Shown here: positions 11,605 through 14,909 of the stretch, piece by piece
How the letters are laid out: every line of letters begins with the position of its first letter
Position numbering within the stretch: position 1 is the first letter of the stretch
From: Zygophlyctis sp. KS116
Lineage: Eukaryota > Fungi > Chytridiomycota
NCBI GenBank assembly: GCA_054661495.1
Contig: BAAFSQ010000244.1
Location: forward strand, 1 to 14,909
DNA: 14,909 bases
Direction of reading: 5' to 3'
The notes under the pieces: generated by a model
The model's database searches: none
What the model saw: only the letters and a program-made list of their open reading frames with translations
What the model was told of the DNA's origin: nothing
Made by a program: the position numbers and the translations under genes

Positions 11605-11638
11605 ATCTTGTGAAACCCTGTGCTTTTTTGACGTTTTC

Positions 11639-13432
11639 ATGACCAAGAACAGCCGAGAGTTCCTGCCAGAGTTGGAATTCAAGGTTCAGCAAACATCCCA
11701 CTTGGCGTAACTTTAAACAATGCTAATATCAGGTTTGCTCTTCAAGACGGTCTTGCTTTTATGACTCTCGGTGCGCAAGCGATAGCGCAGGTGAGACTTT
11801 GATCTGATTGAATATAGGATGAATTTAGTAAATGCTTTGTTCAAAAACCCAGGACATCTTGGTTTAAAATCAGATCGCTTGGATTGGCTTATGCCGGGGG
11901 AATCTTGATCAGATATCTAATTTTATTTCCCTATCGATTGTGTTTGTTATTATTGGCATCTGTCCTATTTTTCATTGCTTTGCCCATTATTTCTCTTCTA
12001 GATAGTGAGAAATGGCAGCGATGGCTATTTAGAATTTACTGCCGTGCTTTTCTAGAAAGTTGGTAATCACTTTGCCTGCTGATAACTTAGGGGATCTCGA
12101 ATTCGGTATCATGGAGAAAAACCGGATCTCAAGGATCCTCATGTTTTTGTATCTAATCATACTTCCTTTATAGACTTTTTGGTACTTAGTGCAAATTCCT
12201 TTCCGCATGCGATAATTGCACAAAAACATGGTGGTATAATAGGTTACTTTGAGAATTTTGTACTTTCTTTGAATGGATCATTGGTTTTTGATAGGAAAGA
12301 GAAAGTTGATCGATCTATTTTGACTTATAAGTAATTGTATTTTAGAATTAACCATTTTAGAATGAAAAAACATGTACATACGCCAAATACAAGTCCTATT
12401 CTAATATTCCCGGAAGGAACTTGTGTGAATAATGAATACACAGTATTGTTCCATAAAGGAGCTTTTGAATTAGATTCGATAGTATGCCCAGTGGCTATAA
12501 AGTACGAGATTTTAAATAACAATTAGATATAATAAAGCATGGGCGGATGCTTATTGGCATACAAGAACTCAGACATTCTCAAAGCATTTGTTATATTTAA
12601 TGACTCGTTGGGCGCTTGTCGCAGACGTTTGGTATTTGACACCCAGAGCCAAGCGTGAAGATCAAACTGCGGTTGAATTTTCTAATGAAGTGAAGGCAGA
12701 GATTTCTAAAAAGGCAGGTTTGCGAAATCTATCAATGGATGGCTATTACAAGGTACCTTATATTTTGTTTATAATTAGAATTTTGCTCCAGCAGAGGAAA
12801 AGCAAATTCGTCTCCGACAAAATCCTCAAATACGGTATGGTGCGGTATTAGCGAATAGGATGAAAAATAGAAAGATAACAAACACTTCCTCTGATCGATC
12901 GGTTCACAAAAGATTTCATAGCCAAGCTGAGGGGTGGCAAGAAAGTCCAAAAAAAGATACATCTGCTCAAATGTATTTATTGCATCAGCTGGATTGGATT
13001 TCTGAAGTATCCACACAAGGTTTATCGGTCAAAAATAAGATGTTGGTGGCACTGCAGGATGATCCTTCCAGTATGATACAGACTATATCTGATAAGAAGA
13101 GTTGTGTCGTAGCCACTTGGAAACGGTTTACCAAAATGAAAACTGCTGAAGATCATTCTCAACGAAGAATCGAAAATTCCACTTGGAGATTATGGTTTAA
13201 GCAGCGGATCGAGCTAGAAAAGAAGAAAGAACGGGAAAGGCTAGAAAGAGAAATGAATTTACAAGAATTAGAAACTGGAACTGAATTAATGCAGAGTGCT
13301 TTCCTTAATTTCTTTTCTGGTGCTGTTAGTCCAGGGGAACCTTCAATAACTGACAATGATTTGCATAGTGACCAGTTACGTAGAGTCTATAGCACGGGAT
13401 CTCTCATGAAAAAATCTGATAGTAGTAATTAA
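11639..13432 (+). CDS. Glycerol-3-phosphate acyltransferase (animal GPAT3/GPAT4, plant GPAT9 type) with long C-terminal extension, ~543 aa, 7 exons
   Basis: AIAQDEFSKCF, GILIRYLILFPYR, catalytic NHTSFID, LIFPEGTCVNN, FHKGAFE, PVAIKY, ADAYW, MTRWALVADVWYL, MDGYYK. Introns 11707-11732, 11791-11817, 12063-12090, 12331-12360, 12502-12526, 12753-12778. The last exon reads without a stop into ORF 12860-13432. Confidence 0.9.
13109..13207 (+). other. DUF1752/AreA-type (Mondo-like) motif in the GPAT C-terminal tail
   Basis: VATWKRFTKMKTAEDHSQRRIENSTWRLWFKQR matches by eye the W..(F/Y)TK...RLENxSWRxW pattern of fungal DUF1752. Confidence 0.7.
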
Positions 13433-13554
13433 AAAGTTCATTAAAGGAAATGTTTATTGCATTCTCGTTGTAATTGAGGATTAATCTCATAGTAAAAATA
13501 AAGAGCCGACATTAAAATCTAAAAGTTGAATGTATTTTGTATGGGAGTCTCATA

Positions 13555-13568
13555 GGGGGGGGGGGGGG
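13555..13568 (+). repeat. Poly-G tract (G14)
   Basis: 14 consecutive G in an AT-rich intergenic region, 45 nt upstream of the ERG7 ATG. Confidence 0.9.
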
Positions 13569-13613
13569 TAAAATCAAAATTGTGGTTTCTGATAACAGCC
13601 CTACAATCTAGAA

Positions 13614-14909
13614 ATGACTGATCTGAGTAGATGGCGGTTAAGAGTTGATCATGGAGCACAGACGTGGCATTATCTCAGTCCAGAGGAAGCTTGTGATTGG
13701 CCTCTATCTGCATCTGATATGTATTGGCTTGGGAATTACCACGGAAGAAAGTTAAAGGCGCCAAAAGACGCATATGCCAGTGCCATAAATGGATTTGAAT
13801 TTTTCAAGGAGCTACAAACAGAAGATGGACATTGGGCAGGAGAGTATGGCGGACCAATGTTTTTGATTCCTGGGCTTGCAATCGTTATGTACATCACCGG
13901 TGCAGTTTATCCCCGTGGATATGAGCAGGAAATGATCAGATATCTCAAAAATCGAGCTAATAAATTTGATGGAGGATGGGGGATGTAAGTCATGTTTTTT
14001 TGTAATTGAAAAGTCATATTGAAGCCGTATCTTCTGTTTTTGGGACAGCTTTAAACTATGTAGCTCTTCGTTTACTGGGAGCCCCAGCAGACGATCCAGT
14101 TTGCGTAAAAGCTAGAAATCATTTACATTGTTTGGGTGGAGCTTCGGGAATACCTGCTTGGGGGAAATTTTGGCTGGCGGTTTTGAATGTTTATGACTGG
14201 GATGGTGTCAATCCAATTCCACCTGAATTATGGTGTCTGCCTTACTCTCTTAATCCTATTCATCCCGGTAGAATGTGGGTGCATACTAGAGCTGTATATC
14301 TCTCTATGAGTTATATGTATGGGCTACGTTTCCAAGCTGATGAAACGGATTTAATCAAAAGCCTTAGGTCTGAATTATATGTTTCGCCTTACGAAAAGAT
14401 TCATTGGAAGTCTTTAAAAAATCATGTTGCTGAGGTGGATTTGTACGCTCCTCATACTGCTACTTTAGATATTTTAAATTCAATGGCAGGTTTATACGAG
14501 CAGCTTCCTAATTCTATTTTACGAAAAAAGGCCTTGGAAGTCGTATTAGATCATATTCGTGCGGAAGATCGCAACACAAACTTTTTGGATTTAGGACCGG
14601 TAAAATACGAATTTTATCATACCAGGTTAATAAAGTTATGAATATTCTTGTCTCATGGCTGGCTGATGGGCCTTCATCTGAATCCTTTCAAAAACATTTG
14701 GAGCGTGTCCCAGATTTTATGTGGATGAGCAGTCAAGGAATGATGATGAATGGTACGAATGGATCACAACTATGGGATACTGCTTTTGCTGTTCAAGCAC
14801 TTACTGAATCAGGTTTAGCCGAAGAAGAATTTGCACGCCCATATATGCTCAAAGCTCTCGAGTTTTTGGATGATTGTCAAATCAAGGATAACATGGTTGA
14901 TTATGAAAA
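13614..14909 (+). CDS. ERG7: Oxidosqualene cyclase, lanosterol synthase type (5' part; continues beyond the window)
   Basis: TDLSRWRL, QTEDGHWAGEYGGPMFLIPG, DGGWGIHIE, IPAWGKFWLAVLNVYDWDG, PIPPELW, HPGRMWVHTR, LGPVNK, MNGTNGSQLWDTAF. Thr in GTNGSQ is the lanosterol-synthase residue, whereas cycloartenol synthases have GYNGSQ. Introns 13985-14013 (29 nt) and 14600-14625 (26 nt). Confidence 0.95.

What the first reader, a model, noticed from the sequence alone, without database searches (positions are those of the whole stretch)
11639..13432. GPAT3/4/9-type acyltransferase fused to a DUF1752/Mondo-like nutrient-signalling motif
Seen: after the usual family C-terminus (MDGYYK...) the frame stays open for about 190 more aa, containing WKRFTKMKTAEDHSQRRIENSTWRLWFKQR followed by a charged coiled coil. 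Known: RLENxSWRxW (DUF1752) occurs in fungal nutrient regulators such as AreA/Gat1, Mks1, Sfp1 and Reg1, and it resembles the ChREBP/MondoA segment WKNF...RLNNAIWRAWYIQ that binds 14-3-3. I know of no such motif on a membrane lipid-synthesis enzyme. Inference: a directly nutrient-regulated entry step of glycerolipid/TAG synthesis, possibly an undescribed regulatory module.
Basis: partly seen in the sequence, partly recalled or inferred. Interest (0 to 1): 0.8.

Follow-up and report, generated by a model that had tools for sequence, protein, structure and literature searches.

The report
Chytrid GPAT enzyme with signalling tail
In this lake chytrid, and in every named chytrid fungus checked, the enzyme that starts fat and membrane-lipid synthesis carries a conserved C-terminal tail with a short motif otherwise known from fungal nutrient regulators, which suggests (not shown) that the enzyme is wired directly to nutrient signalling.

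Summary
Window 11639-13432 (+) is one seven-exon gene with six 25-30 nt introns, coding about 543 aa. The first ~325 aa are a GPAT9/GPAT3/4-type acyltransferase. The last exon (12779-13432) adds about 190 aa beyond the usual family end.

- **One gene, not two.** The 27 codons upstream of the tail's first ATG are under purifying selection (pN/pS 0.10-0.30). The same intron and in-frame junction occur in three related environmental loci. A metatranscriptome contig lacks exactly the 26-nt intron and runs past that ATG. Independently annotated chytrid proteins are colinear across the junction.
- **Motif identity.** The motif (13118-13207) matches Pfam PF08550 (DUF1752/GATA_AreA) at threshold here (18.0 or 21.9 bits, cut-off 20.9). 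Orthologues score up to 28.3 bits.
- **Range.** The fusion is in all ~40 named Chytridiomycota orthologues, including Batrachochytrium, Spizellomyces, Gonapodya and Hyaloraphidium. It is absent from microsporidian, Dictyostelium and plant GPAT9.

The function is inferred, not shown. The resemblance to the 14-3-3-binding helix of ChREBP is real as a pattern but statistically weak. In yeast Reg1 the DUF1752 overlaps the mapped 14-3-3-binding region. My best guess is a phospho-regulated 14-3-3 docking tail. I class this as a new variant of known kinds.

The parts
11639..13432 (+). Whole gene: GPAT9/GPAT3/4-type acyltransferase with C-terminal DUF1752 tail. Seven exons, about 543 codons.
   Evidence: Reading of the sequence and three-frame translation. 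Colinear tblastn of annotated chytrid orthologues P0071, P0083, P0072 and P0021.
11639..11706 (+). Exon 1 (MTKNSREFLPELEFKVQQTSHL + 2 nt). Least certain part of the model. Intron 1 = 11707-11732 (26 nt, GTAAC...CAG).
   Evidence: Only a 26-nt GT-AG intron joins ATG 11639 (frame 2) to the conserved FALQDG frame. Orthologues align from FALQDG onward. No RNA evidence.
11733..11790 (+). Exon 2 (FALQDGLAFMTLGAQAIAQ). Intron 2 = 11791-11817 (27 nt).
11818..12062 (+). Exon 3 (DEFSKCF... and the hydrophobic, presumably membrane-spanning stretch 11878-12000). Intron 3 = 12063-12090 (28 nt).
   Evidence: Hydrophobicity was read from the translation; no TM predictor was run.
12091..12330 (+). Exon 4: acyltransferase motifs I (NHTSFID, 12158-12175) and II (GSLVFDR). 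Intron 4 = 12331-12360 (30 nt).
   Evidence: PF01553 E 5.4e-07, 29.9 bits. Single copy in the genome.
12361..12501 (+). Exon 5: motifs III (FPEGT, 12407-12421) and IV (VCPVAIKY). Intron 5 = 12502-12526 (25 nt).
   Evidence: PF01553 E 1.2e-07, 32.1 bits..
12527..12752 (+). Exon 6, ending in ...LSMDGYYK. Intron 6 = 12753-12778 (26 nt, GTACC...TTAG).
   Evidence: RNA contig with these 26 nt left out. Same intron position in L001, L002 and L003.
12779..13432 (+). Exon 7: the 217-codon tail plus stop TAA at 13430-32.
   Evidence: Open frame. Homologues P0001-P0011. Chytrid-wide alignment.
12779..12859 (+). Linker NFAPAEEKQIRLRQNPQIRYGAVLANR, upstream of the first ATG of the tail frame (12860). It is coding, which shows that the tail has no start of its own.
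   Evidence: pN/pS 0.10-0.30 with pS 0.50-0.86 against L001, L002 and L003. Chytrid-wide consensus DGYfKNfaP.keKq.rlke.pQ.RyGavL.nR.
12908..12922 (+). KRFHS: a conserved basic-x-x-Ser site (chytrid consensus lrRs.s, e.g. RRSAS, RRSNS). It looks like a 14-3-3 mode-I or AGC/PKA-type phosphosite.
   Evidence: R45 and S48 are nearly invariant. Conserved across about 38 chytrid orthologues. Phosphorylation not tested.
12971..13228 (+). Conserved ~86-aa helical module (LLHQLDW...NKMLVALQDD...MIQTISDKK..VVATWKRFTK...QRRIENSTWRLWFKQRIELEKKK).
   Evidence: Alignment A2 has 33 invariant columns. The profile finds 44 proteins among 1.84 billion representatives. All ten full-length ones scanned are acyltransferase fusions.
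13118..13207 (+). DUF1752 / PF08550 (GATA_AreA) motif WKRFTKMKTAEDHSQRRIENSTWRLWFKQR.
   Evidence: PF08550 E 0.0027, 18.0 bits, HMM positions 2-28 of 28. 21.9 bits, over the cut-off, in the genome scan. All 12 members match. Orthologues score 20.9-28.3 bits. 24 of 30 ESM-Atlas neighbour clusters carry PF08550.
13376..13405 (+). LRRVYSTGSL: C-terminal site conserved only in the window's near relatives. The pattern L-R-R-x-x-S-x-G-x-L fits the AMPK/Snf1 consensus from textbook knowledge.
   Evidence: L200, R202, S205, G207 and L209 are invariant in A1. Not conserved chytrid-wide. The kinase assignment is inference only.

Best explanation
One gene encodes the genome's only GPAT9/GPAT3/4-type glycerol-3-phosphate acyltransferase, which by family is a membrane-bound, ER-type enzyme. 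Its C-terminus, cytosolic in characterised GPATs, has been extended by a regulatory tail conserved across the phylum.

The tail has three parts:
- a conserved linker;
- an RRSxS-type phosphosite-like motif;
- an ~86-aa helical module ending in a DUF1752 (PF08550) motif and a charged helix.

Most likely mechanism (inferred, not shown): the tail is a docking and switch module for a nutrient-signalling partner. It would couple GPAT activity or ER/lipid-droplet localisation to carbon or nitrogen status. The most probable partner is a 14-3-3 dimer, binding the DUF1752 helix without phosphate, as in ChREBP, and the phosphorylated RxxS site.

Graded confidence:
- single fused gene conserved in Chytridiomycota: about 0.95;
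- motif is a true DUF1752 member: about 0.85;
- tail is a regulatory docking module: about 0.6;
- partner is 14-3-3: about 0.35.
For: **Fusion.**
- The frame is open from the acceptor at 12778 to 13432.
- The 27 codons before the first ATG are under purifying selection.
- Three related loci have ...DGY[YF]K, a short intron, then NFAP...ANRMKNR... in frame, all downstream of an acyltransferase. The downstream neighbour has changed orientation in two of them.
- RNA contig X2 (223 nt) lies on 12725-12973 with exactly 26 nt left out at the intron and one mismatch.
- Annotated chytrid proteins are colinear through the junction.

**Range.**
- All ten long hits of the tail profile are PF01553 plus tail.
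- Their names are Cladochytrium, Thoreauomyces, Synchytrium, Lobulomyces, Globomyces, Nowakowskiella, Gonapodya, Hyaloraphidium, Batrachochytrium, Spizellomyces and others.
- The motif is present in all named chytrid orthologues and in no microsporidian, Dictyostelium or plant GPAT9.

**Motif identity.**

**14-3-3 lead.**
- ChREBP 117-137 is a phosphorylation-independent 14-3-3-binding helix (PMC11873037).
- PF08550 is the only Pfam hit of that peptide.
- The tail profile aligns ChREBP 102-139 with both anchors, WKxF and RxxNxxWRxWxxQ, one gap apart.
- Reg1's DUF1752 is residues 173-204 (PMC12520357). Bmh 14-3-3 proteins bind Reg1 187-232 (PMC10847541).
- The genome encodes a 14-3-3.

**Precedent.** The cytosolic C-terminus of yeast Gpt2 carries a conserved phospho-motif that controls GPAT activity (PMC7613133).
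Against: - There is no functional data of any kind for the tail.
- The window's own hmmscan score (18.0 bits) is under Pfam's cut-off of 20.9. Several orthologues give no PF08550 hit at E 0.01.
- The ChREBP similarity is within database noise. It scores E 0.26, below evidently spurious Noc hits at E 0.006. The WKxF half adds nothing to the Pfam score.
- Reg1 point mutants inside DUF1752 did not change 14-3-3 co-precipitation (PMC12520357). The review describes Bmh binding to phosphorylated Reg1.
- The AF2 model of the tail is low confidence, pLDDT 50.
- The RNA contig has only 26-28 nt on the 5' side of the joint, under the tool's 31-nt bridging rule.
- The 5' end of the gene model (exon 1) has no RNA support.
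Confidence: 0.6

Rival explanations
1. The tail is a separate small gene (ATG 12860 to 13432, 190 aa) lying directly behind the acyltransferase in a very compact genome. The apparent fusion is an artefact of reading through.
For: Mechanical ORF callers list it as a stand-alone 170-190 aa protein in several metagenomes. Intergenic spacers in this genome are tiny: 34 nt between MCM6 and this gene.
Against: - The 27 codons upstream of the ATG are conserved at the protein level, with pN/pS 0.10-0.30.
- That conserved segment starts exactly at a splice acceptor in four genomes.
- A spliced RNA contig is continuous from exon 6 across 12860.
- About 40 annotated chytrid proteins join both parts.
- The tail is never found apart from an acyltransferase in any protein long enough to judge.
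Confidence: 0.03
2. The tail is a structural or membrane-related extension rather than a nutrient-signalling module. Examples are an amphipathic or aromatic helix that senses the bilayer or lipid droplets, or a coiled coil that oligomerises the enzyme. On this view the DUF1752 likeness reflects a shared helix type, not a shared partner.
For: - The tail is predicted to be all-helical with a long charged helix.
- The WRLWF core is aromatic and basic, as in many membrane-interface helices.
- The enzyme is membrane-bound.
- PF08550 scores are near threshold.
Against: - The same motif sits in soluble nuclear or cytosolic regulators (AreA-type GATA factors, Reg1), where membrane sensing is unlikely (Pfam name; PMC12520357).
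- The polar positions (RR.EN, KQR) are invariant too, which is more than a hydrophobic face requires.
- A conserved RRSxS site accompanies it.
Confidence: 0.22
3. The tail is a docking module for a partner other than 14-3-3. Candidates are the Snf1/AMPK complex or PP1 (as for Reg1, where a nearby W165G change blocks stimulus-induced binding to AMPK), or a TORC1-pathway component.
For: - Reg1 mutations in and next to DUF1752 affect Snf1 regulation, and W165G abolishes induced AMPK binding without changing 14-3-3 co-precipitation (PMC12520357).
- The window's sub-clade has a C-terminal site that fits the AMPK/Snf1 consensus.
Against: - W165 lies outside the 173-204 motif.
- No RVxF-type PP1 motif was seen in the tail (reading).
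- The AMPK-like site is not conserved chytrid-wide.
- Nothing here tests any partner.
Confidence: 0.15

Closest known systems
GPAT9 (plants, algae) / GPAT3 and GPAT4 = AGPAT6 (animals): ER glycerol-3-phosphate acyltransferases, Pfam PF01553
   Same: All four acyltransferase motifs are present, along with the conserved N-terminal DEFSKCF region, the hydrophobic stretch and the ...DGY.K end. The best named relatives are annotated AGPAT6, GPAT9 or GPAT3/4.
   Different: Plant GPAT9 ends about 27-30 aa after DGYLK. The chytrid enzyme continues for about 190-400 aa with a conserved linker, an RRSxS site and a DUF1752 module.
DUF1752 / PF08550 (GATA_AreA) proteins: AreA-type GATA factors and yeast Reg1/Reg2 (PP1 regulatory subunits)
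   Same: The 28-aa motif ...RR[ILV]EN.SWR.W[FY]K is shared. The same genome has a canonical carrier at C22 scoring 53 bits. Function is unknown in all of them (PMC12520357).
   Different: The known carriers are soluble regulators with the motif near the N-terminus. Here it sits at the C-terminus of a membrane enzyme, inside a longer module (about 45 conserved residues upstream) that was found only on acyltransferases.
ChREBP/MondoA conserved region with the alpha2 helix (residues 117-137) that binds 14-3-3 without phosphorylation (PDB 5F74; PMC11873037)
   Same: The pattern WKxF..LK...(R)[IL][NE]N..WR.W[YF].Q has the same spacing, and a basic stretch follows it. A phosphoserine 14-3-3 site is also present elsewhere in the protein.
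   Different: This is a metazoan bHLH-Zip transcription factor. The similarity scores are not significant in a database-wide sense (E 0.26; 0.019-0.064). Homology is not shown and binding is not tested.
Yeast Gpt2 (Gat1): GPAT of the SCT1/GPT2 type with a phospho-regulated cytosolic C-terminus
   Same: The concept is the same: the first enzyme of glycerolipid synthesis is controlled through conserved sites in a cytosolic C-terminal extension, which affects activity, TAG level and ER/lipid-droplet distribution (PMC7613133).
   Different: It belongs to a different GPAT lineage and uses a different motif (S664/S668/S671). It has no DUF1752.

Membership tests
GPAT9/GPAT3/4-type acyltransferase (PF01553) | Profile match over Pfam's gathering score | tested here: met
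   Exon 4 scores 29.9 bits and exon 5 scores 32.1 bits, against a cut-off of 23. The exons were scanned separately by reference.
GPAT9/GPAT3/4-type acyltransferase (PF01553) | Four catalytic and binding motifs: HxxxxD, GxxFxxR, FPEGT, and V.P[VI]AI.Y | tested here: met
   NHTSFID (12158-12175), GSLVFDR, FPEGT (12407-12421) and VCPVAIKY, read from the translation.
GPAT9/GPAT3/4-type acyltransferase (PF01553) | Closest named relatives belong to this subfamily and are colinear | tested here: met
   Orthologues are 54-76% identical per exon. Hits are named AGPAT6, GPAT9 or GPAT3/4.
GPAT9/GPAT3/4-type acyltransferase (PF01553) | sn-1 acylation of glycerol-3-phosphate (enzyme activity) and ER membrane location | not testable with these tools
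   Needs an enzyme assay or complementation, and localisation.
DUF1752 / PF08550 (GATA_AreA) | Profile match over the gathering score (20.9 bits) | tested here: inconclusive
   - The window's tail scores 18.0 bits by hmmscan but 21.9 bits, over the cut-off, in the genome scan.
- Orthologues score 28.3, 24.9, 24.4, 23.7, 21.5 and 20.9 bits.
- Some orthologues give no hit at E 0.01.
DUF1752 / PF08550 (GATA_AreA) | Full-length alignment to the 28-position model with the RxEN..WR.W core | tested here: met
   HMM positions 2-28 of 28 align to tail residues 114-141. The core is invariant in A1 and A2. PF08550 is the top family in 12 of 12 members. 24 of 30 ESM-Atlas neighbours carry PF08550.
Mondo (ChREBP/MondoA) 14-3-3-binding helix | Significant sequence or profile similarity to the Mondo conserved region | tested here: inconclusive
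   The tail profile hits 5f74_B residues 102-139 at E 0.26. PF08550 is the only Pfam hit on the ChREBP peptide, at E 0.019 and 0.064. No Mondo family alignment was available for a profile-profile test.
Mondo (ChREBP/MondoA) 14-3-3-binding helix | Direct, phosphorylation-independent binding to 14-3-3 | not testable with these tools
   Needs a binding assay or a multimer structure prediction. The genome does encode a 14-3-3.

The most novel reading that the evidence does not exclude
DUF1752 and the Mondo/ChREBP alpha2 helix may be one ancient opisthokont docking helix that binds 14-3-3 without phosphorylation and is perhaps metabolite-gated. In chytrids this helix would be bolted directly onto the committed enzyme of glycerolipid synthesis. 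Lipid synthesis would then be switched post-translationally by the same logic that animals use transcriptionally through ChREBP. The same reading would also give DUF1752 in Reg1 and AreA/Gat1 its long-missing function.
Probability: 0.2. Interest if true: 0.8.

Novelty: new variant of a known kind. Interest (0 to 1): 0.55.

Why it matters
GPAT catalyses the committed first step of membrane and storage lipid synthesis. How it is tuned to nutrient state is only partly understood in any organism.

Here a whole fungal phylum, including the amphibian pathogen Batrachochytrium and the genetically tractable Spizellomyces, carries a conserved signalling-type motif on that enzyme. The motif's function is unknown even in yeast Reg1 and AreA.

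This gives two things:
- a simple, testable model of direct post-translational nutrient control of lipid synthesis;
- a new and unusually clean context, one enzyme with one measurable activity, for finding out what DUF1752 does and whether it is a 14-3-3 docking helix related to that of ChREBP.

Tried and rejected
- **NCBIfam scan of the tail.** Only noise.
- **AF2 fold of the tail with the 12-row alignment.** pLDDT was 50 and pTM 0.23, with helices only. No fold search was run on it because matches to a low-confidence model are meaningless.
- **PDB sequence search.** The top hits, nucleoid occlusion protein and alpha-catenin, align to the non-motif part. I judged them spurious.
- **First model of intron 1.** I initially drew it as 11671-11732, 62 nt with a GTTGGA donor. 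I replaced it with 11707-11732, which is 26 nt with a GTAAC donor, fits this genome's intron size and keeps the frame.
- **Possible extra intron at 12835-12858** (GTATGG...AATAG). Rejected: the frame is open without it, the residues it would remove are conserved (YGAVLANR), and the RNA contig is continuous there.
- **Longer ChREBP segment against Pfam.** It did not raise the PF08550 score, so the WKxF half is not part of what Pfam's model recognises.
- **Fusion outside Chytridiomycota.** An unnamed environmental clade (P0098 group) has the motif at its extreme C-terminus but has no named relative. The only Blastocladiomycota hit (Paraphysoderma, P0178) is a partial model that ends 12 aa after DGYFK. 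The range beyond chytrids therefore stays open.
- **Joined spliced protein.** It was never built or sent to any search or fold tool.
- None occurred.
Full report
**1. What is in the sequence**

The region 11639-13432 (+) lies between an MCM6 gene, whose stop is at 11602-04, and an oxidosqualene/lanosterol cyclase gene, whose ATG is at 13614.

Three-frame translation and colinear alignment of annotated chytrid orthologues give a seven-exon model:

| Feature | Coordinates | Length |
|---|---|---|
| Exon 1 | 11639-11706 | 68 nt |
| Intron 1 | 11707-11732 | 26 nt |
| Exon 2 | 11733-11790 | 58 nt |
| Intron 2 | 11791-11817 | 27 nt |
| Exon 3 | 11818-12062 | 245 nt |
| Intron 3 | 12063-12090 | 28 nt |
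| Exon 4 | 12091-12330 | 240 nt |
| Intron 4 | 12331-12360 | 30 nt |
| Exon 5 | 12361-12501 | 141 nt |
| Intron 5 | 12502-12526 | 25 nt |
| Exon 6 | 12527-12752 | 226 nt |
| Intron 6 | 12753-12778 | 26 nt |
| Exon 7 | 12779-13432 | 654 nt, including the stop |

- All six introns are GT-AG.
- Exon lengths and phases add up to 543 codons.
- Exon 1 is the least certain part and has no RNA support.
- PF01553 matches exons 4 and 5.
- All four acyltransferase motifs are present: NHTSFID, GSLVFDR, FPEGT and VCPVAIKY.
- The gene is single-copy in the 12.7-Mb assembly.

**2.

- After ...LSMDGYYK and intron 6, the frame is open for 217 codons.
- Plant GPAT9s end about 27-30 residues after the equivalent DGYLK.
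- The quoted string WKRFTKMKTAEDHSQRRIENSTWRLWFKQR is at 13118-13207 and is followed by a charged helix.

**3. One gene or two?**

The first ATG of the tail frame is at 12860, and mechanical ORF callers list a 190-aa protein there. Four lines of evidence say that this ORF is simply the end of the acyltransferase gene.

- (a) *Selection upstream of the ATG.* The 27 codons upstream (12779-12859, NFAPAEEKQIRLRQNPQIRYGAVLANR) are conserved in three related environmental loci. Synonymous differences are near saturation (pS 0.50-0.86) and non-synonymous ones are few (pN 0.08-0.16), giving pN/pS 0.10-0.30.
- (b) *Same junction in relatives.* In L001, L002 and L003 the same arrangement recurs...DGY[YF]K, a short stop-containing intron, then N[FY]AP... 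in frame through the tail, always just downstream of an acyltransferase. The next gene downstream has flipped orientation in L001 and L003, so this link has outlived local rearrangement.
- (c) *Spliced RNA.* A 223-nt contig from a freshwater metatranscriptome (X2) lies on 12725-12973 with exactly 26 nt left out at the intron and one mismatch. It is therefore spliced and continuous across 12860. The caveat is that only 26-28 nt lie 5' of the joint, just under the tool's 31-nt rule for bridging. Two further RNA-library contigs (X1) match 12989-13139 and 13265-13414 exactly.
- (d) *Independent gene models.* About 40 independently annotated chytrid proteins of 450-800 aa join the two parts.

**4. 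What the tail is**

*Pfam identity.*
- PF08550 (GATA_AreA, formerly DUF1752) is the best Pfam family for the tail: E 0.0027, 18.0 bits against a cut-off of 20.9, covering HMM positions 2-28 of 28.
- It is also the best family for all 11 close homologues, with best E 0.00019.
- In a six-frame scan of the whole genome the tail is the second-best PF08550 match, at 21.9 bits, over the cut-off. The best is a canonical carrier on contig C22 at 53 bits.
- Orthologues score up to 28.3 bits.
- 24 of the 30 nearest ESM-Atlas clusters carry PF08550.
- I accept membership, noting that this particular sequence sits at the threshold.

*The motif is embedded in a longer module.*
- Alignment of 38 chytrid tails gives this consensus, in order:
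  - DGYfKNfaP.keKq.rlke.pQ.RyGavL.nR
  - lrRs.s
  - rNeiLval.d..r...mi..I...kndvV.tWk.YtK.r..d..qRR.EnsSWRlWFKqRie
- A profile of the ~86-aa core (A2) searched against 1.84 billion representative proteins finds only 44 hits at E <= 0.001.
- All ten of those hits that I scanned (the long ones, 416-763 aa) are PF01553 plus tail.
- The ~45 residues upstream of DUF1752 therefore appear specific to this enzyme.
- A C-terminal LRRV[HY]STGSL site is conserved only in the window's near relatives.
- AF2 predicts helices only, at low confidence. This fits a region that folds on a partner.

**5. Taxonomic range**

- Named carriers include Batrachochytrium dendrobatidis, Spizellomyces punctatus, Powellomyces, Homolaphlyctis, Rhizoclosmatium, Cladochytrium, Nowakowskiella, Synchytrium, Lobulomyces, Globomyces, Kappamyces, Chytridium, Gonapodya and Hyaloraphidium. 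These span Chytridiomycetes and Monoblepharidomycetes.
- A regular-expression check finds the core in every named chytrid orthologue. It finds it in none of the microsporidian, Dictyostelium, algal or plant GPAT9s returned.
- Unnamed environmental clades also have it.
- The one Blastocladiomycota model is truncated, so the range beyond chytrids is open.
The orthologue names and the 25-30 nt introns measured here agree with that.

**6. How it may work (inference)**

The tail has the hallmarks of a regulatory docking module: a conserved basic-x-x-Ser site, and a short invariant helix otherwise found in nutrient regulators.

Three published facts point to 14-3-3:
- ChREBP residues 117-137 form one of the few phosphorylation-independent 14-3-3-binding helices (PMC11873037).
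- Reg1's DUF1752 spans residues 173-204 (PMC12520357).
- Yeast 14-3-3 proteins bind Reg1 residues 187-232 (PMC10847541).

Tested here:
- PF08550 is the only Pfam family that hits the ChREBP peptide (E 0.019 and 0.064).
- The chytrid tail profile aligns ChREBP 102-139 through both anchors, WKxF and R..N..WR.W..Q, with a single one-residue gap (E 0.26 in the PDB).
- The genome encodes a 14-3-3.

These scores are weak and not independent of each other. The Reg1 paper also found no change in 14-3-3 co-precipitation for its DUF1752 point mutants. I therefore put 14-3-3 at about 0.35, and 'some signalling partner' at about 0.6.

Regulation of a GPAT through a phosphorylated cytosolic C-terminus has a precedent in yeast Gpt2 (PMC7613133).

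**7. Novelty**

- Both halves belong to known families.
- The combination is present but unremarked in public protein records. A few of them already carry both Pfam labels in precomputed annotation.
- Full-text searches for DUF1752, PF08550, chytrid GPAT and GPAT9 with 14-3-3 found no description of it.
- The scan's own notes hold nothing on it.
- I rate it a new variant of a known kind.

**8. Limits**

- The joined spliced protein was not built or submitted anywhere. Exons were searched separately by reference.
- RNA evidence is from metatranscriptome contigs, not reads, and is thin at the 5' side of the joint.

Noticed in passing
window 11707-11732, 11791-11817, 12063-12090, 12331-12360, 12502-12526, 12753-12778: All six introns of this gene are 25-30 nt long and GT-AG. 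This agrees with the scan's earlier notes on ultra-short introns in this genome and window.
   Followed up: partly
window 11605-11638 and 13433-13613: Only 34 nt separate the MCM6 stop from the GPAT start codon, and 181 nt separate the GPAT stop from the cyclase ATG. MCM6-GPAT adjacency is kept in L001 and L002. The cyclase is on the opposite strand in L001 and L003.
   Followed up: partly
window 13556-13570: A run of about 15 G in the spacer between this gene and the oxidosqualene cyclase gene.
   Followed up: no
L005 838-1632 (-) = G000 C22, match at 46764-46838: This is the genome's canonical DUF1752 protein (PF08550 52.6-53.3 bits, motif GRRLENISWRLWYR near the N-terminus of a 264-aa ORF). 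No other Pfam domain was looked for, so its identity (Reg1-like, AreA-like or other) is unknown.
   Followed up: partly
ESM Atlas result: A Streptophyta cluster auto-named 'putative Sucrose-phosphate synthase 2' has PF08550 in 48% of members. Sucrose-phosphate synthase is, from general knowledge, a classic plant 14-3-3 client. This may be a coincidence or an auto-naming artefact.
   Followed up: no
P0098, P0099, P0102-P0104, P0107-P0110, P0115 (unnamed Logan/ENA/NCBI proteins): An environmental clade of GPAT9-type proteins carries the RR[IL]EN.[ST]WR.WF motif within about 25 residues of the extreme C-terminus and lacks most of the upstream module. Its nearest named relatives are chytrids at 44-46% identity.
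   Followed up: partly
window 11920-12086 (run X3): A contig from a library labelled RNA-Seq but of metagenomic source matches exactly and runs into intron 3. It is probably genomic DNA or unspliced RNA. The organism or a near-identical strain therefore also occurs in a soil-labelled sample.
   Followed up: no
P0065 (NCBI, 784 aa): One chytrid record flagged UNVERIFIED_CONTAM combines PF00501 (AMP-binding) with PF01553 and the tail. This is probably a merged gene model.
   Followed up: no
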